NCBI RefSeq assembly: GCF_006345805.1
Contig: NW_021827801.1
Span: 1 to 9,875, forward strand
Source of the DNA: Octopus sinensis
Lineage: Eukaryota
Length of the DNA stretch: 9,875 nucleotides
Direction of reading: 5' to 3'
In this document: one piece after another, positions 1 to 9,875 of the stretch
How positions within the stretch are numbered: the stretch's first letter is position 1
Layout: the number at the start of each line of letters is the position of its first letter
The notes under the pieces: model-generated
What the model saw: the letters and a program-made list of their open reading frames with translations, nothing else
Database searches by the model: none
What the model was told of the DNA's origin: nothing
Made by a program: the position numbers and the translations under genes

Positions 1-136
1 AAGAGAGAGAGAAATAGAGAGAGGGAGGGGAGAGAGCGAAAGAGAGAGAGAGCGAGAGAGAGAGAGAGCGAGAGAGAGAGAGTGAGAGAGAGCGAGAGCG
101 AGAGAGGGAGAGCGAAAGAGAGAGAGAGAGCGAGAG

Positions 137-212
<76 letters not shown>
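1..212 (+). repeat. (GA)n polypurine microsatellite with GAGC interruptions
   Basis: Direct reading: near-continuous AG dinucleotides, pure from about 150 to 212; may extend upstream of the window. Confidence 0.98.
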
Positions 213-1321: not shown

Positions 1322-1675
1322 GATTGGATTGGATTGGATCGCCTGTGTTCAGTCCACTGCTGGATAAAGGCCTCAGCATTTTCCCTTCACCAACCACGGT
1401 CGGATGTGGAGGCTGTGAATTTGAGCCTGAGATCATAACGGATTAATTTGTTTACGGTGAGCAAGTCTTTATGCCATAGATGACCTCCTCTCTCCATCAA
1501 AATCGGCATTACCTGTACAGGTGCATGGAGTGGCATAGTCAGATGTTGAAGTGATCGTGGAGCAACATGAGGTAAAGTGTTTTTTTGCTCAAGAGCACAA
1601 TCCATAACCCAGTCCGGGTATCGAAACTACAATCTCGCGATCATGAGTGCAATACTCTAACCACTAGGCTACTTT
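1322..1675 (-). mobile_element. tRNA-derived SINE (family 3 head) with RTE-like 3' tail
   Basis: Minus strand: Box A TAGCCTAGTGG (1671-1661), Box B GTTTCGATACC (1627-1617), tail GAGGCCTTTATCCAGCAGTGGACT (1374-1351) resembling recalled RTE-clade 3' ends, then terminal (ATCCA)n (1339-1322). The 5' boundary is approximate. Confidence 0.75.
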
Positions 1676-1942
1676 CCTTGACAGGGTTAATATAATACCT
1701 AAAATACTGAATTTTACAAATTTCATGTTTGCAATCCGATTTATAAATCTCATTAGCCATAAATTTGTGAATTTACATACCTGCGCCTAGTTGTGGATAA
1801 CAAGTTTACGTCTTAAAAAATTATGGCGATTTTCCTAAAATATGAATATTAATTTATCGATTTGTGTAATGCATTTTACGTGGATTTTTTAAAATACGTT
1901 TATCTATTGTATAGATATGCACTTTCGTGTTGTTTCCTCTTC

Positions 1943-1981
1943 TACTTGTTTCAGTCATTTGACTGTGGCCATGCTGGAGCA
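1943..1981 (-). mobile_element. Isolated 3'-tail fragment of SINE family 1
   Basis: tacttgtttcagtcatttgactgtggccatgctggagca matches the tail of the copies at 3552-3983 and 6892-7297. Confidence 0.85.
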
Positions 1982-2046
1982 TGATGTGCAAGATATGTGT
2001 GTGCATGTATATATGTGTACATGTATATACACATATATTCTTTTAA

Positions 2047-2426
2047 TTGTTTCAGTCATTTGACTGCGGCCATGCTAGAGCACCGCCTTTAGTCGAGCAA
2101 ATCAACCCCAGGACTTATTCTTTGTAAGCCTAGTACTTATTCTCTCAGTCTCTTTTGCCGAACCGATAAGTTACGGGGATGTAAACACACCAGCATCGGT
2201 TGTCAAGCGATGTTGGGGGGACAAACACAGACACACAAACGTATACACACACACACACAAACGTATACACACACATATATACATATATACGATGGACTTC
2301 TTTCAGTTTCCGTCTACCAAATCCACTCACAAGGCTTTGGTCGGCCCGAGGCTACAGTAGAAGAAACTTGCCCAAGGTGCCACGCAGTGGGACTGAACCC
2401 GGAACCATGTGGTTCGTAAGCAAGCT
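2047..2426 (-). mobile_element. SINE family 1 (octopus tRNA/CORE-type, OR1/OK-like), 5'-truncated
   Basis: Colinear with the other family 1 copies; Box B GGTTCAGTCCC, CORE-like CCTTGGGCAAGT (2377-2366) and internal (CA)n/(TA)n present; Box A end absent. Family name is from memory. Confidence 0.9.
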
Positions 2427-2504
2427 TGCATGTTTTTTACAGCTGTGATTTCTGATGCGTTTGTTGCAATGTGTTTCTTCTTCTTGTTCTATGAGTTAGT
2501 CTAA

Positions 2505-2571
2505 TCCGGCTAATCGTTGAAAGGACGTTGGTGTTGCATTGGTGGAGGTTTGCACTCTCTGAGTACTCTTG
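2505..2571 (+). mobile_element. 3'-terminal fragment of the Helentron-associated element, copied within arm A
   Basis: Identical to the reverse complement of 4616-4682; contains the sub-TIR ggtggaggt and the stem-loop gcactc-tct-gagtac, ending CTTG. Confidence 0.75.
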
Positions 2572-2661
2572 ATTATAATACATTACAAGTACTAAATACT
2601 CTCTATGCAAGTCAGTAACTCTCTTCCTTTGAAGCTCCTGGGTTAGATGTGTATATGAACA

Positions 2662-2924
2662 AGGCGGCGAGCTGGCAAAGGCGGTGAGCTGGCAAAGGCG
2701 GCGAGCTGGCAGAAACGTTAGCACGCCGGACGAAATGCGTAGCCGTATTTCGTCTGCCGTTACGTTCTGAGTTCAAATTCCGCCGAGGTCGACTTTGCCT
2801 TTCATCCTTTCGGGGTCGATTAAATAGGTACCAGTTACGCACTGGGGTCGATATAATCGACTTAATCCGTTTGTCTGTCCTTGTTTGTCCCTTCTGTGTT
2901 TAGCCCCTTGTGGGTAGTAAAGAA
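2662..2924 (+). mobile_element. SINE family 2 (octopus tRNA-derived, OR2-like) with 15-bp TSD and triplicated 17-bp head
   Basis: TSD atgtgtatatgaaca at 2647-2661 and 2925-2939; Box B GTTCAAATTCC at 2771-2781; three aaggcgg(c/t)gagctggca units at 2661-2711. Confidence 0.92.
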
Positions 2925-2938
2925 ATGTGTATATGAAC

Positions 2939-3551
2939 ATTGTTAGGATATCCGCTTTTAATTAACGTTCGTTTTATCCTCTCGTTTTCCAAGTAGGGAT
3001 TTTAATACCGTAGAAATCTCTGTAAACATTCGCTAACACAATCTAAATGAAGTCATTTTCATTTGTCATTGGTATATACGAACAAGATATATTCGTTGTT
3101 TACTAGCTGAACATTTGTCTGGAAATGACGTCATCGCATTGTTAGAGGATTTATCAATGCTGTTTTGAATGTTTTCTAAAGTCTTTTTGTTTTCAATTAC
3201 TTGAAGTTTCCCGTTGATTCCATTACAGAAAAATATATCCTCCACAAACCTGGTGCATATCGTATATTGACTTTCTACAATGTTGCTCTGTATTGCTTCC
3301 GCATAAAATGCAGCAAATCTGGGTCTTAAGCGAGAACCCATGGCTGTTCCATCTTGTTTACACGATTTGTATTGTAGACCACAAAAGGATTCTCTTGCTT
3401 ATACTGTAGACTTTAATTTCTACATTATATTATCTGGTTTCACAGGTGGTTTAATCTGTAAGCATTTTTAAACATTATTAAATATGGATCCTTTTGTTTC
3501 TGCCACTAATGTGTTAATGAACAGCATTTGTACGTCTAAAGCGATGTTAGC
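2939..3551 (-). pseudogene. Decayed Penelope-like element reverse transcriptase fragment (Penelope/Poseidon-type)
   Basis: Minus-strand translations in the expected order: IALDVQMLFINTLVAET (cf. SLDVESLFTNVP), KQDGTAMGSRLRPRFAAFY (cf. QxDGVAMGSPLGPxFANFY), CTRFVEDIF (cf. RYVDDIF), SFPDK (cf. PFLDV), HLDCVSECLQRF (cf. CLNxxSECPxRY), ERIKRTLIKSGYPNN (cf. ERIKQxLINNGYPN); stops and frameshifts present. Consensus motifs are recalled. Confidence 0.85.
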
Positions 3552-3983
3552 TTTACTCTTTTACTCTTTTACTCTTTTACTTGTTTCAGTCATTTGACTG
3601 CGGCCATGCTGGAGCGCCGCCTTTAGTCGAGCAAACCGACCCCGGGACTTATTCTTTGTAAGCCCAGTACTTATTCTATCGGTCTTCTTTTGCCGAACCG
3701 CTAGGTGACGGGGACGTAAACACACCAGCATCGGTTGTCAAGCGATATTGGGGGGGGGACAAACACAGACACACTAACACACACACACACACACACATAT
3801 ACATATATATACATATATACGACAGGCTTCTTTCAGTTTCCGTCTACCAAATCCACTCACAAGGCATTGGTCGGCCCGGGGCTGTAGCAGAAGACATTTG
3901 CCCAAGATGCCACGCAGTGGGACTGAACCCGGAACCATGTGGCTGGTTAGCAAGCTACTTACCACACAGCCACTCCTGTGCCT
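3552..3983 (-). mobile_element. SINE family 1, full length
   Basis: Minus strand: 5' AGGCACAGGAGTGGCTGTGTGG (Box A 3972-3962), Box B GGTTCAGTCCC (3929-3919), internal (CA)/(TA) microsatellite, (GAGTAAAA)n tail; no clear TSD. Confidence 0.93.
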
Positions 3984-4182
3984 TTGTTGTGTAGTTTCGT
4001 GATGTCTTCTCATGAACAAACTGTAAACAGTATATCACCGTTGTATATCGTTTGATAATGTTGTGTACTTGTTTAGTAGAGCATTAGTATATTTGAAATA
4101 TGTATGTCTACTCATTATGTAGTTGACACACGAACGTCAAATTCAGGCTCTTTCCCGTAGATTAAAAATAATGAACAGCTTT

Positions 4183-4241
4183 ATCGATTTCCCCCTTCTT
4201 ATTGAGGTCTCATCAGAGGTGTTTACATCACCTGACCGGTC
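4183..4241 (-). ncRNA. Degenerate type III hammerhead ribozyme, probably PLE-associated
   Basis: Minus strand: gaccg-GTC-aggtg(atgtaaa)cacct-CTGATGA-gacctcaataagaagggg-GAAA-tcgat; perfect 5-bp stem I hairpin, GUC triplet and both core boxes present; stems II and III imperfect. Confidence 0.65.
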
Positions 4242-4264
4242 TTAGAGCAGCGAGTAGCCAATCC

Positions 4265-4682
4265 GTTCATATACACATTTCTTTACTACCCACAAGGGGC
4301 TAAACACAGAAGGGACAAAAAAGGACAGACAAACGGATTAAGTCGATTATATCGACCCCAGTGCGTAACTGGTACTTATTTAATCGACCCCGAAAGGATG
4401 AAAGACAAAGTCGACCTCGGCGGAATTTGAACTCAGAACGTAACGGCAGACGAAATACGGCTACGCATTTCGCCCGGCGTGCTAACGTTTCTGCAAGCTC
4501 GCCGCCTTTGCCAGCTCGCCGCCTTGTTCATATACACATCTAACCCAGGAGCTTCAAAGGAAGAGAGTTACTGACTTGCATAGAGAGTATTTTAGTACTT
4601 GTAATGTATTACAATCAAGAGTACTCAGAGAGTGCAAACCTCCACCAATGCAACACCAACGTCCTTTCAACGATTAGCCGGA
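4265..4682 (-). repeat. Inverted duplication, arm B
   Basis: Reverse complement of 2505-2938; includes non-SINE flank, TSD and the Helentron terminus. Confidence 0.97.
4279..4524 (-). mobile_element. SINE family 2, duplicate of the 2662-2924 insertion
   Basis: Same TSD (4265-4278 and 4525-4539) and same diagnostic bases (aaatgcgtagccgtatt); two 17-bp head units instead of three. Confidence 0.92.
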
Positions 4683-5202
4683 GATGATTTTTAAAATAAG
4701 AATATCTGAAATAAACTCGACTACTCTCACAAACGAGAATAGAAAAAAATGAACCCGACTGCTCTCAAAAATCAAATAAAATACCAGAAAAACAATCCAG
4801 AATCCTTGTCCGGTACTGGATCGATCCCAATAGTGGTCATGGAATGTGGAGGAGGCTGTAGAAAATTTAATAACAATAATAAATAGTTTATCCTTATCTA
4901 ATACAAGCCAAAGTTAACAAATTCGCCGTTCAAAATAGTTACAGCGTAAAGGGAGATAATTGAGAAAGACTTGAAAGTGAACGTAAGATCGTAATCATGT
5001 GAAGTAAAAAAAATATAACAAATAATCCAGAATCCTTGTCCGGTACCGGATTGATCCCAAAATCTAATCAATTCATGCTAATCACGAGGGCAAACATCCC
5101 TGAAAATTTCATCCAAATCCATCCAGCGGTTCTTGAGATATCTTGTCCACAGACACACAAACAAAGAAGCACGACTAAAAACAATACTTCCACCTTCGCT
5201 AA
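4616..5202 (-). mobile_element. Helentron-associated non-autonomous element, copy 2, with internal 40-bp duplication and filler
   Basis: Stem-loop gtactc-aga-gagtgc (4621-4635), sub-TIR acctccacc (4638-4646), body homologous to 839-1165; only one arm of the terminal hairpin remains (about 5186-5202). Confidence 0.7.
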
Positions 5203-5419
5203 AAATGCTAAAATAAGACATATTCTTATTAATAAGAAAACACAAGCATGTAAGTCCGTAAAACAATAACCGATGTGGTTAAAAAAAATCTGATTGCACA
5301 GGAAACTTTATCATTTTATTGTTCACCTCTTCACCATTACTATTATTTATTTTCTCAGCAACCACATACCGGATGTGTCTATTCACCTCCAACAATATTT
5401 CATTTCATGACGGCTACCT

Positions 5420-5503
5420 CTGATGAGCGCAAGGTTACATAATCGGATTGTTACCTTACACTCCATTTAATCCCTAACACGAAACCGATTGATAAGATCG
5501 GTT
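5420..5503 (+). ncRNA. Possible hammerhead-like relic (type I order), stem I not in register
   Basis: CTGATGA (5420-5426), G...C closing pair, GAAAC (5481-5485), stem III ccgat/atcgg, GTT triplet; stem II is degenerate. Confidence 0.3.
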
Positions 5504-5552
5504 GTAATGAATATATAGTACTGTACATTTCGAATAATATGCTCACTCTGTT

Positions 5553-5572
5553 TGTGTGTGTGTGTGTGTGTG
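5553..5572 (+). repeat. (TG)10 microsatellite
   Basis: Direct reading. Confidence 0.95.
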
Positions 5573-5573
5573 C

Positions 5574-5794
5574 AAGGTGAGGTAGCAGAATCGTTAGAAC
5601 GCCGTGTAAAATGCTTCGCGGCATTTCGTCAGTCTTTTAGATTCTGAGCCCAAATTCCGCCGAGATGGCTTTGCCTTTCATTTTTCTGGGGGCAATAAAA
5701 TTGGTACCAGTCGAACACTGCGATCCACGTAATCGACTTACCCCTTCCTCCGAAATTATTGGTCTTGTACCAAAATTTGAAATCGTTATTTATT
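5574..5794 (+). mobile_element. Older, diverged relative of SINE family 2 with a different 3' tail
   Basis: gcagaatcgttagaacgcc...aaattccgccgag...ctttgcctttcat...ggtaccag...taatcgactta aligns to family 2; after cgactta it switches to ccccttcctccgaaattattggtcttgtaccaaaatttgaaa. Confidence 0.8.
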
Positions 5795-5955
5795 GGCTAT
5801 ACAACGCTTTCTGGCATACAATAAATAACAAACGCAAAGAACTCATAACGTATTTTGCACACAGCTTCTTCGACTGAGTTAAAAAAAAGTTCCAGGAATT
5901 TGTCGGAATGCGACCGCGGGTTGTACTGTAGGAGTAAATGACAGTCTGGTAAACG

Positions 5956-6546
5956 ACTCTCTTTACTCTTTTTACCTCTTTACTTGTTTCAGTCATTTCA
6001 CTGTGGCCATGCTGGAGCACCGCCTTTAGTGGAGCAAATCGACCCCAGGACTTATTTTTTGTAAGCCTATTCTATCAGTCTCTGTTGCCGAACCGCTAAG
6101 TTACGGGGACGTAAACAAATTTATATAATAGGACAAATTTATATTATTTAATCACAACCGAAGCAAGGCTCGATAACCTCACTACCTCCTCCTGGTCCGA
6201 AAGAAAAATGTGGAGGGGATCTCTAATAAACCAGCCTCTCAGTCCACAAAAAAGGGACGATTCTTCCTCTTCCGGGGGCGTAAACACACCAGCATCGGTT
6301 GTCAAGCGATATTGGGGGGACAAACAGACACAAACACACACACACACACATACACACACATATATATATATACATATATACGACGGGCTTCTTTCAGTTT
6401 CCGTCTGCTGCCAAATCCACTCACAAGCTTTGGTCGGCCCGAGGCTATAGTATAAGACACTTGCTCAAGGTGCCACGCAGTAGGAATGAACCCGGAACCA
6501 TGTGCTTGGTAAGCAAACTACTTACCACACAGCCACACCTGCGCCT
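5956..6546 (-). mobile_element. SINE family 1, full length, interrupted by a 155-bp insertion
   Basis: Tail part 5956-6117 and head part 6273-6546, ending cctgcgcct; 7-bp deletion near 6068. Confidence 0.92.
6118..6272. mobile_element. Unclassified 155-bp insertion with 14-bp target-site duplication
   Basis: cggggacgtaaaca (6104-6117) and cgggggcgtaaaca (6273-6286), 13/14 identical; other family 1 copies have this motif once. Confidence 0.7.
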
Positions 6547-6891
6547 GCAGGATATAGGCGTGATGTTTTTTGTGTACGAACATTCCGGGTAAGTACCATA
6601 TGGGATTGCGGGTGTAGTGCAATTTCGCACCTCTCCTTGAAAAATGCATTTCTTTTAAAAAATTTTTTTCGGATTCCTGCGTTTTTGATGTCAGAGATTA
6701 CGAATATCAAAAAAAAAAAATTAATTTCATCCCCTCCCCCATTAAAATTTTTAATTTTGTTTACTTTAAAGAGGTCGTAGCGAATTGACGAACAACAGCA
6801 AATCGAAATTAAATACAGACAAAAACATTAACGAGAAAAGAATTTGAGTTTTACTTGTGTTTGCCTTAAATAATCGTAAATAATAATTTAA

Positions 6892-7297
6892 TACTCTTAC
6901 TCTTTTACTCTTTTACTTGTTTCATTCATTTGACTGCGGCCATGCTGGAGCACCGCCTTTAGTCGAGCAACTCGATCCCGGGACTTATTCTCTTTGTAAG
7001 CCCAGTACTTATTCGATCGGTCTCTTTTTGCCGAACCGCTAAGTGACGGGGACGTAAACGCAACAGCATCGGTTGTCAAGCAAGGGGAACAAACACAGAC
7101 ACACAAACACACATACATATATATATATACATATATACGACAGGCTTCTTTCAGTTTCCGTCTACCAAATCCACTCACAAGGCATTGGTCGGTCCGGGGC
7201 TATAGCAGAAGACACTTGCCCAAGATGCCACGCAGTGGGATTGAACCCGGAACCATGTGTTTGGTTAGCAAGCTACTTACCACACAGCCACTCCTGT
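6892..7297 (-). mobile_element. SINE family 1, nearly full length
   Basis: Box A, Box B, CORE-like segment and (TACTCTT)n tail present; short internal deletion before the microsatellite. Confidence 0.92.
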
Positions 7298-7423
7298 AAA
7301 TTAAATGTACTCTTTTTTGTGAGAAACAAACAATATTTAATAACTAATGTTATAAAGTTTAATAAGGGGCTCAAATTTCACTCCCTCCCCCTATTTTAAA
7401 TTTTGAACTTTTTCATCCATTTA

Positions 7424-7637
7424 ACTCATGATCGTAGGGTTGTGGTTTCGATTCCCGGACCGGGCAATGCGTTGTGTTCTTGAGCAAAACACTTCATTTT
7501 CACGTAGCTCCAGTCCACTCAGCGGGTAAAAATGAGTAATCCTGCGACGGGCCGGCGTCCCGTCCAGGTGGGGAATTTCTACATTACTGAAACCGGGAAA
7601 CCGGCCCTTATGAGCCTGGCGTGGCTCGAGAAGGAAC

Positions 7638-7638
<1 letters not shown>
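7424..7638 (+). mobile_element. tRNA SINE with family 3 head and a CORE/V-like body, 5'-truncated
   Basis: actcatgatcg...GTTTCGATTCC (7445-7455)...ttgtgttcttgagcaaaacactt...gtagctcca aligns to the head of 1322-1675; then ccagtccactcagcgggtaaaaatgagtaa and cctgcgacgggccggcgtcccgtccagg. Confidence 0.75.

Positions 7639-7640
<2 letters not shown>

Positions 7641-7684
<44 letters not shown>
7641..7684 (+). repeat. (AT)22 microsatellite
   Basis: Direct reading; abuts the SINE 3' end. Confidence 0.97.
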
Positions 7685-7686
<2 letters not shown>

Positions 7687-8054
7687 GCCGAAAAAGGCAT
7701 TTTTTTTCCAAATACGCCAGCTAAACTAAGTTGTACTGTCTATAGTCGTAAGACACCCGCTGTTTTTGTCCTGTTATTACTATTATTGTTTTTTGTAGTT
7801 ATATTCGTGTGGCATCGTCCGTTTTTCTGTCCTTGTTTCGTATACATTCGATGCTTTTCCCAAGAAATATAATGCTCGTAGCTTAGTTTTTCTTTGGGGC
7901 TGACCAGATTGGAGCAATCTCAAGATTAATCAGCCGAAATTGCGAGGATGATCCGGTTCTTGACTGAAGATTGAAAGCTTCGAATGTCGCGTCCGTGTTT
8001 TTTGCATAGTCTTCTAAATGTTTTACGTTCTTGTCCCAGTTTGTATTTTTCTAC

Positions 8055-8175
<121 letters not shown>

Positions 8176-8250
8176 AAGCCTTCTTCTATCATACTCTCAA
8201 TTTTGGTCAACTTGCGCCGCAGGGTCTCGGAGGAGACAGTATTAGTTGAA

Positions 8251-8850
8251 GGCGGCGAGCTGGCAGAAACGTTTGCACGCCGGGCGAAATGCTTAGCGGT
8301 ATTTCGTCTGCCGTTACGTTCTGAGTTCAAATTCCGCCGAGGTCGACTTTGCCTTTCATCCTTTCGGGGTCGATTAAATAAGTACCAGTTACGCACTGGG
8401 GTCGATGTAATCGACTTAAAACCTATGTCTGTCATTGTTTGTCCTCTCTATGTTTAGCCCCTTGTGGGTAATAAAGAAATAGGTATTTCGTATGCCGTTA
8501 CGTTCTGAGTTCAAATTCCGCCGAGGTCGACTTTGCATTTCATCCTTTCGGGGTCGATTAAATAACTACCAGTTACGCACTGGGGTCGATGTAATCGACT
8601 TAATACCTATGTCTGTCATTGTTTGTCCCCTCTATGTTTAGCCCCTTGTGGGTAATAAAGAAATAGGTATTTCGTATGCCGTTACGTTCTGAGTTCAAAT
8701 TCCGCCGAGGTCGACTTTGCCTTTCATCCTTTCGGGGTCGATTAAATAACTACCAGTTACGCACTGGGGTCGATGTAATCGACTTAATCCGTTTGTCAGT
8801 CCTTGTTTGTCCCCTTCTATGTTTAGCCCCTTGTGGGCAGTAAATAAATA
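8251..8850 (+). mobile_element. SINE family 2 trimer (one head plus three 184-bp bodies) inside a single 14-bp TSD
   Basis: TSD agtattagttgaag at 8238-8251 and 8851-8864; bodies start ggtatttcgt at 8298, 8482 and 8666. Confidence 0.93.
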
Positions 8851-9494
8851 AGTATTAGTTGAAGACTACCAAACCCGCCACACACAGACAACTTCAGCTT
8901 TATATATATAGAGAGAGATTAAGAATAAAGTCATCAGTTCTTGTGTTACTTATCTTAATTTTTGCTGCAATTCAGAAGTGTTTAGAACATTGCAAAGTAA
9001 CCAACATTTTATTGAAAAAAAGAAAAATAGTTTTTCCTAACAGGTCACATATTTAAAAAAATTACTGTACTGACACGTAGGTAGGAGTTGCAGCTGTTGT
9101 TAGCCCAACATCGCTACCATCATTATCACAGGCTAAAGAACAAAGGAACCAGAATGCAAACGCCGTAGATTTGACCTCCATCCACAAAGCATCTCTTGAT
9201 GGCAATAGCATCTACTGCACCGGCATCCTTTGTTTCTTAAGATGCCCATTGAGGTGTCATGGAACTTACTGAACACTTCAGCAGTATGCCAGCTGCAACT
9301 GTTATAACAACACTGGGACACTGCTGTTCAACCAACACAGCAGTGCACTCTTAAAATTTTACGTGAAGAAAGCAGATTGAACGTAAGAGCTGGCGAATAA
9401 ACTGGCTCATTATGGGCTACTTACTATTGAGGCGAAGGTTCGCTGTGTTTGCGTTCGAATCCTATCTCTGCTCCAGCTAAATTCTAAAATTGTA

Positions 9495-9875
9495 AAATTC
9501 CGCCGTGGTCGACTTTGCCTTTCATCCTTTCGGGGTCGATGAATTAAGTACCAGTTACGCACTGGGGTCGATATAATCGACTTAATACCTATGTCTGTCA
9601 TTGTTTGACCCCTCTGTGTTTAGCCCCTTGTGGGTAGTAAAGAAATAGGTATTTCGTCTGCCGTTACGTTCTGAGTTCAAATTCCGCTTAGGTCGACTTT
9701 GCCTTTCATCCTTTCGGGGTCGATGAATTAAGTACCAGTTACGCACTGGGGTCGATATAATCGACTTAATACCTATGTCTGTCATTGTTTGTCCCCTCTA
9801 TGTTTAGCCCCTTGTGGGTAGTAAAGAAATAGGTATTTCGTATGCCGTTACGTTCTGAGTTCAAATTCCGCCGAG
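9495..9875 (+). repeat. Second tandem array of the 184-bp family 2 body, running off the window end
   Basis: Partial unit 9495-9647, full unit 9648-9831, partial unit from 9832; same aagaaata|ggtatttcg junction as the first array. Confidence 0.93.

What the first reader, a model, noticed from the sequence alone, without database searches (positions are those of the whole stretch)
2505..4682. Recent inversion with a ~420-bp inverted duplication: staggered-break signature
Seen: 2505-2938 and 4265-4682 are reverse complements with only 6 substitutions and 2 indels, and include flank sequence, a TSD and part of a second element, so these are not two independent SINE insertions. Each arm has one native and one new junction. 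Arm B continues natively into the Helentron-type element at 4683, while arm A cuts it at 2505. Arm A continues natively into the PLE RT at 2939 (15-bp TSD intact), while arm B stops at 4265. Inference: the ancestor was 1-2504 + revcomp(2939-4264) + arm B, and a staggered break inverted 1.3 kb and duplicated the arm, as established for Drosophila inversions with inverted breakpoint duplications. aatcc at both 2503-2507 and 4260-4264 would rebuild a palindromic aatccggatt ancestral junction (speculative).
Basis: partly seen in the sequence, partly recalled or inferred. Interest (0 to 1): 0.7.

Follow-up and report, generated by a model that had tools for sequence, protein, structure and literature searches.

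The report
Young 418-bp inverted duplication among transposons
A 418-base stretch of transposon-rich, non-coding DNA has been copied once in reverse orientation 1.3 kb from the original; this is an ordinary small rearrangement, and the window alone cannot show whether the DNA between the copies was also flipped.

Summary
Bases 2505-2938 and 4265-4682 are reverse complements that differ by 6 substitutions, a 1-nt indel and one 17-nt tandem unit. Each arm carries the same composite:
- 68 nt of the end of a DINE-1/HINE-like element (X)
- 74-75 nt of anonymous flank
- one SINE with both copies of its 14-nt target-site duplication

So this is one duplication, not two SINE insertions. Arm B runs on natively into X, because a second X copy at 839-1011 aligns straight through 4682/4683.

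- The argument that arm A's inner junction is native rests on one base, which is better read as the SINE's first base.
- The "PLE RT" in the spacer has no detectable homology.
- Both new junctions are blunt. This favours break-and-join over microhomology-primed template switching, but does not settle the polarity.
- Assembly error and mobility of the composite could not be tested, because no collection held this genome.

One oddity: the inner boundary of the repeat falls exactly on the outer edge of the SINE's target-site duplication. Interest is low to moderate.

The parts
2505..2938 (+). Arm A of the inverted duplication (434 nt); the SINE is in sense orientation on the + strand
   Evidence: Its outer junction 2504/2505 is new, because it cuts element X 68 nt from X's end.
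4265..4682 (-). Arm B of the inverted duplication (418 nt), the reverse complement of arm A
   Evidence: Its outer junction 4682/4683 is native, because X copy 1 aligns straight through it.
2505..2572 (+). Terminal 68 nt of the HINE-like element X inside arm A, including the conserved motif GGAGGTTTGCACTCTCTGAGTACT at 2544-2567
   Evidence: The exact 24-mer occurs in 13 metagenome contigs, next to X-like architecture.
2573..2646 (+). Anonymous flank inside arm A (74 nt); counterpart in arm B is 4540-4614
   Evidence: No other copy in the window. A 27-mer from it is absent from genome contigs and viral contigs.
2647..2660 (+). 5' target-site duplication ATGTGTATATGAAC in arm A; counterpart in arm B is 4526-4539
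2661..2924 (+). SINE1 copy in arm A (264 nt), with three copies of a 17-nt 5' unit
   Evidence: 92-94% identical to SINE1 copies at 8249-8486 and in the 184-nt arrays. TRF gives 17 nt x 3.0 at 2661-2711.
2925..2938 (+). 3' target-site duplication in arm A; its outer edge is the inner end of the inverted repeat
2939..4264 (.). Spacer M' (1,326 nt): unique sequence with a nested SINE2 copy at 3552-3985 and a 91-aa ORF on the minus strand (3066-3341) that has no detectable homologue
4265..4278 (-). 3' target-site duplication in arm B, directly abutting the spacer at 4264/4265
4279..4525 (-). SINE1 copy in arm B (247 nt), with two copies of the 17-nt unit
   Evidence: TRF gives 17 nt x 2.0 at 4492-4525
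4615..5215 (-). Element X copy 2/3 (DINE-1/HINE-like, 5'->3' on the minus strand); its last 68 nt (4615-4682) lie inside arm B
   Evidence: Aligns to X copy 1: 839-1011 with 4653-4830, and 959-1152 with 5008-5202. Architecture compared.
2427..2504 (.). Left flank L: 78 nt of unique sequence between a 5'-truncated SINE2 (1922-2426) and the new junction 2504/2505

Best explanation
A real and evolutionarily young rearrangement duplicated a 418-nt composite segment D in inverted orientation, in a single event with two new junctions (2504/2505 and either 4264/4265 or 2938/2939). D consists of TSD-SINE-TSD, 75 nt of flank and the last 68 nt of a HINE-like element. In that model the ancestor was L - M - D - R, where L is 1-2504, M is the reverse complement of the spacer M' (2939-4264), and R is 4683 onward. 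A double-strand break at L|M and two single-strand breaks on opposite strands either side of D (or the equivalent breaks on sister chromatids) released M+D. The 418-nt overhangs were filled in, and the ends were rejoined by non-homologous end joining. That gives L - D' - M' - D - R (a prime marks the reverse complement), an inversion flanked on one side by a duplication. Shown: the duplication, its composition, the native D|R junction, and the blunt new junctions. Inferred: that it is not an assembly error, that it was one event, that the spacer was inverted, and the break chemistry. The sequence has no evident function. Its likely consequences are a long hairpin if it is transcribed, and a spacer prone to flipping by recombination between the arms.
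For: The inverted repeat is 418/434 nt with 6 substitutions and 2 indels. The shared flank, the X piece and the identical TSDs exclude independent SINE insertions. D|R is native. The 5 substitutions inside the SINE, polarised against other SINE1 copies, fall 2 in arm A and 3 in arm B. All 6 substitutions are 4 transitions and 2 transversions. Arm A also has an extra 17-nt unit that carries its own substitution. This is the pattern of two copies diverging independently, not of read errors. The junctions have 0 nt of microhomology, or at most TCC at 2505-2507, which fits end joining of preformed ends. The size and the one-sidedness fall within the documented range for staggered-break inversions (PMC1885836). 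Inversions flanked by a duplication are a recognised class in human structural variation (PMC5338099). The left flank of arm A (2493-2507) resembles the left flank of arm B (4252-4264), with 12 identities ending exactly at both junctions. The nominal p is 0.003 and is uncorrected. That match would place a quasi-palindrome at the ancestral L|M breakpoint.
Against: Nothing in the window shows which inner junction is native. The 1-nt TSD extension is better read as SINE sequence. No outgroup, second allele or reads could be reached: exact look-ups of 12 window ORFs and DNA scans found nothing from this genome. The rebuilt palindrome folds no better than shuffles, at -1.7 kcal/mol with z = -0.02, and its similarity is not significant after about 10-40 implicit comparisons. 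The documented Drosophila cases are chromosome-scale inversions; this one would be 1.74 kb. The inner boundary sits exactly on a TSD edge, which a random-break model does not predict.
Confidence: 0.45

Rival explanations
1. Inverted copy inserted, with no inversion. The ancestor was L - M' - D - R, that is 1-2504 joined directly to 2939-9875. A break at 2504|2939 was repaired by taking in a reverse-complement copy of the nearby segment 4265-4682. The copy came either from capture of a fragment released from the sister chromatid, or from a switch-and-return of DNA synthesis (four-point type 1-4-3-2). Both junctions of arm B are then native, and both junctions of arm A are new.
For: It needs the same number of new junctions as the inversion model and explains the same sequence. 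Template-switch events that create an inverted repeat without inverting the spacer are slightly commoner than those that invert it, at 31% against 23% of human-chimp events (PMC5453318). The similarity between 2493-2504 and 4252-4261 could then be decayed direct repeats flanking an old insertion M'.
Against: Both arm A junctions are blunt, with no microhomology to prime copying. Described short template switches are tens of bases long, not 418 nt copied from 1.3 kb away. The flank similarity reaches its junction-anchored form only if TCC (2505-2507), which in this model belongs to the insert, is counted. Anchored at 2504 the score is 0.
Confidence: 0.3
2. Assembly artefact. The second arm is a misplaced allelic copy or the product of a chimeric read, so one or both new junctions do not exist in the animal.
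For: The arms differ by 1.4%, which is in the range of allelic differences in a heterozygous invertebrate. The region is dense in SINEs and microsatellites, which are hard to assemble. No independent data could be reached.
Against: Foldback read artefacts give palindromes with no spacer, whereas here 1,326 nt of unique sequence separate the arms. A heterozygous simple inversion contains neither 4264/4265 together with 2504/2505 nor two copies of D, so a wrong path through its graph would still need a join found in neither allele (inference). There are no gaps or Ns. Differences are spread along the arms, and the 5 polarised ones fall on both arms.
Confidence: 0.12
3. Multi-step history. One version: a longer inverted (fold-back) duplication R' - D' - M' - D - R was later trimmed by a deletion that created 2504/2505. 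Another version: a duplication was followed by gene conversion between the arms.
For: It cannot be excluded from one sequence. Gene conversion between 418-nt arms is expected and would make the 1.4% divergence a minimum age.
Against: It needs more events. No remnant of further inverted similarity exists beyond either arm end: the comparisons of flanks give p = 0.26-0.28. The spacer is not flanked by a TSD that would suggest insertion into a pre-existing palindrome.
Confidence: 0.08
4. The 2.2-kb unit is a transposon with long terminal inverted repeats (foldback-like), or the 418-nt composite is itself a mobile unit.
For: Long inverted ends around a 1.3-kb core look superficially like a foldback element.
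Against: Arm B's end is not an element end, because X continues through it. No target-site duplication flanks 2505-4682 (leftA_vs_rightB p = 0.81). The arms are a patchwork of three unrelated sequences including a SINE with its own TSDs. There is no other copy of the flank in the window.
Confidence: 0.03

Closest known systems
Inversions with inverted duplications at the breakpoints (staggered-break model; Ranz et al. 2007, PMC1885836)
   Same: An inverted duplicate of sequence that includes non-repetitive flank. The 418-nt duplication lies within the reported range of 46 bp to 1.9 kb (median 321 bp). It is one-sided, as in 12 of the 18 inversions described. Blunt rejoining is compatible with fill-in followed by end joining.
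   Different: Those inversions are chromosome-scale and were polarised with outgroup species. Here the inverted segment would be only 1.74 kb, the ancestral arrangement is unknown, and the duplicated segment is mostly transposon sequence.
Inversions flanked by a copy-number change in human structural variation (dupINV / INVdup classes; Collins et al. 2017, PMC5338099)
   Same: The same topology: an inverted segment with a duplication at one end and two novel junctions.
   Different: Those were detected as polymorphisms of kilobases to megabases from read pairs. Here there is one assembled sequence and no population data.
Template-switch mutations, four-point model types 1-3-4-2 and 1-4-3-2 (Loytynoja and Goldman 2017, PMC5453318)
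   Same: A reverse-complement copy of nearby sequence creates an inverted repeat, with or without an inverted spacer. The two types correspond exactly to the two candidate ancestors.
   Different: Described events are short-range, within one replication fork and usually tens of bases. Here the copy is 418 nt over 1.3-1.7 kb, and no microhomology is seen at the switch points.
DINE-1 / HINE non-autonomous Helentrons (Thomas et al. 2014, PMC4067079), for element X only
   Same: A palindrome nested at one subterminal repeat (1138-1159). An adjacent microsatellite-like tract. An inverted match of that repeat near the other end (4640-4647). No coding capacity. Internal repeats. A widely conserved terminal sequence.
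   Different: The inverted subterminal match is only 7-9 nt, against 11-13 nt in the published families. The 3' stem-loop, the TT target and an autonomous partner were not established.

Membership tests
Inversion with inverted breakpoint duplication (staggered-break signature) | Inverted duplicate of an ancestrally single segment at the two ends of the rearranged interval | tested here: met
   Arms 2505-2938 and 4265-4682 are 98.6% identical in aligned positions and include 143 nt of non-SINE sequence.
Inversion with inverted breakpoint duplication (staggered-break signature) | Each copy keeps one native junction and has one new junction, on opposite sides | tested here: inconclusive
   Arm B's outer junction is native and arm A's outer junction is new. 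Which inner junction is native cannot be told: the only argument is 1 nt at 2939, which is better read as SINE sequence.
Inversion with inverted breakpoint duplication (staggered-break signature) | An uninverted single-copy arrangement exists in an outgroup or another allele | not testable with these tools
   No collection held this genome or a relative.
Inversion with inverted breakpoint duplication (staggered-break signature) | Duplication length within the observed range | tested here: met
   418 nt against 46 bp to 1.9 kb, median 321 bp.
Template-switch mutation (four-point model) | A fragment copied in reverse complement from nearby sequence | tested here: met
Template-switch mutation (four-point model) | Short range and short copied fragment (tens of bases) | tested here: not met
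   The copy is 418 nt (type 1-4-3-2) or 1,744 nt (type 1-3-4-2), taken from up to 2.2 kb away.
Template-switch / microhomology-mediated replicative repair | Microhomology at the switch junctions | tested here: not met
   0 nt at 4264/4265 and at 2938/2939; 0 nt, or at most 3 nt (TCC), at 2504/2505.
Transposon with long terminal inverted repeats / foldback element | The inverted repeats are the element's ends and are flanked by a target-site duplication | tested here: not met
   X runs through 4682/4683. The flanks 2477-2507 and 4683-4712 show no similarity.
Two independent SINE insertions | Different target sites and flanks for each copy | tested here: not met
   The same 14-nt TSD occurs four times, and the arms share the same 143-nt flank.
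HINE / DINE-1-like non-autonomous Helentron (element X) | Subterminal inverted repeats (11-13 nt in published families), with a palindrome nested at the 5' one | tested here: inconclusive
   The palindrome CTCCGCCTTCGCTAAGGCGGAG lies at 1138-1159. The inverted match CCTCCACC at 4640-4647 is only 7-9 nt. The same layout is seen in metagenome contig L006 (hallmarks).
HINE / DINE-1-like non-autonomous Helentron (element X) | Central microsatellite or repeats, a 3' stem-loop, insertion at TT, and an autonomous Helentron partner | tested here: inconclusive
   A microsatellite-like tract lies at 1103-1128, and there is an internal repeat (4774-4830 against 5006-5060). The stem-loop, target site and partner were not established.
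Penelope-like element (spacer M') | A recognisable reverse-transcriptase domain | tested here: not met
   Pfam found no RT family even at E <= 10. The word-index search found nothing. HMMER against 1.84 billion representatives gave only a bacterial Ig-repeat protein at E = 7e-6.
Penelope-like element (spacer M') | Hammerhead ribozyme motif in the terminal repeat | tested here: not met
   Rfam search at E <= 10 over 2300-4900 gave no hammerhead match.

The most novel reading that the evidence does not exclude
The rearrangement may have been started by the SINE's own integration. The inner end of the inverted repeat lies exactly on the outer edge of the SINE's 3' target-site duplication. That is the position of the last nick to be sealed in target-primed reverse transcription. 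If the nick persisted into S phase, it would collapse a replication fork at exactly that base. The broken sister chromatid, already carrying the new SINE, could then be rejoined in inverted orientation. That would make this a retrotransposition-coupled inverted duplication, a way for SINE/LINE activity to reshape flanking DNA beyond simple insertion.
Probability: 0.07. Interest if true: 0.55.

Novelty: new member of a known kind. Interest (0 to 1): 0.25.

Why it matters
If it is real, this is one more small inverted duplication in a repeat-dense intergenic stretch, with no gene or recognisable coding sequence involved. Its value is as a clean example. Both new junctions are readable to the base. 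They are blunt. One of them falls on a retrotransposon target-site edge. A genome-wide count of such boundary coincidences could test whether retroelement nicks seed local rearrangements. The 418-nt arms also create a potential long double-stranded RNA if the locus is transcribed, and a spacer that can flip by recombination between the arms. That makes the locus a candidate polymorphic micro-inversion for population data.

Tried and rejected
1. Independent data for this locus.
- Exact look-ups of two junction-spanning ORFs found nothing, and exact look-ups of ten window ORFs found nothing.
- DNA scans with a 27-mer of the anonymous flank and a 30-mer of SINE1 found nothing in genome contigs or viral contigs.
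- Three sequence strings searched in the paper library found nothing.
- So the assembly-artefact and mobile-composite tests could not be run.

2. Identity of the spacer. These searches were all negative or spurious:
- Pfam
- word-index protein search
- full HMMER search
- Rfam at E <= 10
- tRNA scan

The motif-level resemblance of the ORF at 3066-3341 to the MGS...P / ..VDDIF region of reverse transcriptases is my own recollection only.

3. Metagenome scan with a 24-mer from the arm. It hit 13 contigs. These share only about 30 nt with the window and come from other eukaryotes. The result redefined the end of element X but says nothing about this rearrangement.

4. One-step retro-insertion of arm A plus the spacer, with the flank similarity (2493-2507 against 4252-4264) as its TSD. 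Rejected: the two copies differ at 3 of 15 positions, while the arms made at the same time differ by 1.4%.

5. Fragile palindrome at the ancestral L|M junction. The rebuilt 46-mer folds at -1.7 kcal/mol, z = -0.02. The anchored similarity (nominal p 0.0002-0.003) does not survive correction for about 10-40 implicit comparisons.

6. A second, decayed inverted duplication at the other breakpoint. None found.

7. Timing the duplication against the SINE insertion from differences shared by both arms. The other SINE1 copies in the window are mostly units of two tandem arrays and are not independent, so this was uninformative.
Full report
**1. The observation**

The window is almost entirely repeats: long microsatellites, at least three SINE families, and three partial copies of a non-coding element that I call X.

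The claimed inverted repeat is real.
- The repeat finder returns it as three gapless blocks at 98-99% complementarity.
- A gapped alignment joins them into arm A (2505-2938, 434 nt) and arm B (4265-4682, 418 nt).
- The arms differ by 6 substitutions, a 1-nt indel in an A run, and a 17-nt indel.
- Self-BLAST gives E = 3.5e-158.
- The 17-nt indel is a copy-number difference of a tandem unit at the SINE's 5' end: three copies in arm A and two in arm B. Only one other SINE1 copy in the window includes the 5' end (8249), and it has one copy.
- Identity ends abruptly at both ends of each arm.

**2. Anatomy**

Read on the + strand, arm A consists of:

| Coordinates | Content |
|---|---|
| 2505-2572 | Last 68 nt of element X |
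| 2573-2646 | 74 nt of anonymous sequence |
| 2647-2660 | ATGTGTATATGAAC (target-site duplication, TSD) |
| 2661-2924 | SINE1 |
| 2925-2938 | ATGTGTATATGAAC again |

Arm B is the mirror image: TSD 4265-4278, SINE 4279-4525, TSD 4526-4539, flank 4540-4614, X piece 4615-4682.

The spacer M' (2939-4264) is unique in the window, apart from a nested SINE2 copy at 3552-3985. The left flank L ends with 78 nt of unique sequence (2427-2504), which follows a truncated SINE2.

Both arms carry the same TSD on both sides of the SINE, plus 143 nt of identical non-SINE sequence. They are therefore copies of one locus, not two SINE insertions.

**3. Which junctions are native**

X copy 1 (839-1011) aligns to 4653-4830 with no interruption at 4682/4683...GATTAGCCGGA|GATG... 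appears in both. So arm B's outer junction is ancestral, and arm A's outer junction (2504/2505) is new.

All three SINE 5' ends in the window begin AAGG (2661, 8249, and the related copy at 5576). The A after the 5' TSD copy is therefore best read as the SINE's first base, which makes the TSD 14 nt in both arms. Nothing else distinguishes 2938/2939 from 4264/4265.

Two ancestors therefore fit:
- **(A2)** L + spacer + D + R, with arm A an inverted copy inserted at 2504|2939.

These are exactly the four-point types 1-3-4-2 and 1-4-3-2 of template-switch mutations, which make up 23% and 31% of human-chimp events (PMC5453318).

**4. The junctions themselves**

I compared each new junction with the sequence that each partner would have had natively. 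This gives 0 nt of microhomology at 4264/4265 and at 2938/2939. At 2504/2505 it gives 0 nt, or at most the 3 nt TCC. There are no filler bases.

Blunt joins favour end joining of preformed ends over microhomology-primed copying. That tilts me slightly towards break-and-join models. It does not separate A1 from capture of a free fragment under A2.

**5.

GAGTTAGTCTAATCC (2493-2507) and GAGTAGCCAATCC (4252-4264) share 12 identities, and both end exactly at the junction.
- A junction-anchored score gives p = 0.0002 against shuffles and p = 0.003 against random pairs from unique parts of the window.
- I looked at about ten flank pairings and several offsets, so this is suggestive only.
- Under A1 it rebuilds a quasi-palindrome of about 28 nt at L|M.
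- That palindrome folds at -1.7 kcal/mol, no better than shuffles, so a hairpin-driven break is not supported.
- Under A2 it could be decayed direct repeats around an old insertion, but only if TCC, which then belongs to the insert, matches by chance.

**6. An unexplained coincidence**

The inner end of the repeat falls exactly on the outer edge of the SINE's 3' TSD. The region holds a dozen or so comparable landmarks in about 2.2 kb, and there are three breakpoints. I estimate the chance at a few per cent (inference).

That edge is where the last nick is sealed in target-primed reverse transcription (established knowledge of LINE/SINE integration). A break seeded by the insertion itself is therefore conceivable, and I give it a low probability. 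It could be tested against genome-wide SINE1 consensus sequences.

**7. Identity of the neighbours**

*The spacer.* The "PLE RT" label could not be confirmed.
- Pfam finds no reverse transcriptase.
- The word-index search finds nothing.
- A full HMMER scan of 1.84 billion representatives returns only a bacterial Ig-repeat protein.
- Rfam finds no hammerhead ribozyme.

- A 24-mer from the arm (2544-2567) occurs exactly in 13 metagenome contigs from other eukaryotes. These share only about 30 nt with the window.
- Three of those contigs (L006, L007 and L009) show the layout that X has on its minus strand: a microsatellite-like tract, a conserved core, then this motif near the far end. L006 also shows the subterminal palindrome and its inverted partner.
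- These are hallmarks of DINE-1/HINE elements (PMC4067079). The inverted match here is only 7-9 nt, and no autonomous partner was sought.
- X therefore ends at about 4615-4620, not at 4655 or 4683.

**8. Age and reality**

- Within the SINE, 5 substitutions can be polarised against other copies: 2 are derived in arm A and 3 in arm B.
- All 6 substitutions are 4 transitions and 2 transversions.
- Arm A's extra 17-nt unit carries its own change.

This looks like two copies diverging, or two alleles, not read error. Divergence between the arms is 1.4%, against about 7% between these SINEs and other SINE1 copies in the window. The duplication is therefore young relative to the family, and gene conversion could make it look younger still.

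If the genome is an octopod, the published calibration (JC distance 0.065 at about 18 My; PMC13282606) would put it at roughly 2 My. The octopod origin is my recollection of these SINEs and is untested: the sequence strings were not found in the paper library.

An assembly artefact cannot be excluded. The 1.3-kb unique spacer, and the need for a join that exists in neither allele of a simple heterozygous inversion, argue against it.

**9. Comparison with known cases**

The topology is a known kind.
- One-sided inverted duplications of 46 bp to 1.9 kb mark many Drosophila inversions and were explained by staggered breaks (PMC1885836).
- Inversions flanked by a duplication are a named class of human complex variants (PMC5338099).
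- Small-scale template switches create inverted repeats with or without an inverted spacer.

This case differs from the first in scale and in lacking an outgroup. It differs from the last in size and in its blunt junctions.

**10. Verdict**

| Explanation | Probability |
|---|---|
| Inversion with duplication | about 0.45 |
| Inverted insertion | about 0.30 |
| Assembly artefact | about 0.12 |
| Multi-step history or mobile unit | about 0.11 |

Novelty: a new member of a known kind. Interest: 0.25.

Noticed in passing
window 8298-8856 and 9495-9875 (the second runs off the window end): The 3' 184 nt of SINE1 forms head-to-tail tandem arrays of 3.0 and at least 2.1 units at 95% identity (TRF). 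The first array follows on from a full-length SINE1 with TSD GTATTAGTTGAAG. This looks like a SINE-derived satellite in the making.
   Followed up: partly
window 2540-2567 and 4620-4647; loci L001-L013: A motif of about 28 nt (..GGAGGTTTGCACTCTCTGAGTACT) near the end of element X is exactly conserved in 13 metagenome contigs. These contigs come from other low-GC, gene-poor (eukaryote-like) genomes whose flanks are otherwise unrelated. This points to a strongly constrained terminal signal of a widespread DINE-1/HINE-like repeat family.
   Followed up: partly
window 4774-4830 and 5006-5060: Element X copy 2 contains an internal 57-nt direct repeat (84% identical) bracketing 175 nt (4831-5005) of unrelated sequence. 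This is either an insertion with an unusually long duplication or two tandem X units, as seen in contig L005.
   Followed up: no
window 2493-2507 and 4252-4264: The sequences immediately to the left of the two arms resemble each other (GAGTTAGTCTAATCC / GAGTAGCCAATCC). The nominal p is 0.003 and does not survive correction for multiple comparisons. Its meaning depends on which ancestor is right.
   Followed up: yes
window 1922-2426, 3552-3985, 5956-6545, 6887-7297: Four copies of a second SINE lie on the minus strand. Each has a tRNA-like head at its right-hand end and an (AC)n(AT)n microsatellite core. The copy at 5956-6545 carries an extra segment of about 150 nt at 6118-6270. ARAGORN and Rfam do not recognise the head.
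   Followed up: no
window 1558-1653 and 7419-7512: A pair of inverted copies, 76% identical, of a third tRNA-like SINE head.
   Followed up: no
window 2-212, 512-839, 7640-7684, 8057-8174: Long compound microsatellites are present: (AG)106, (AAT)76 running into (AGA)33, (TA)22, and (ATA)12-(AT)n-(TG)32. They are assembled without gaps, which suggests a long-read assembly.
   Followed up: no
window 3066-3341, minus strand: A 91-aa ORF in the spacer has no detectable homologue in 1.84 billion representative proteins. Any reverse-transcriptase ancestry is too decayed to detect.
   Followed up: yes
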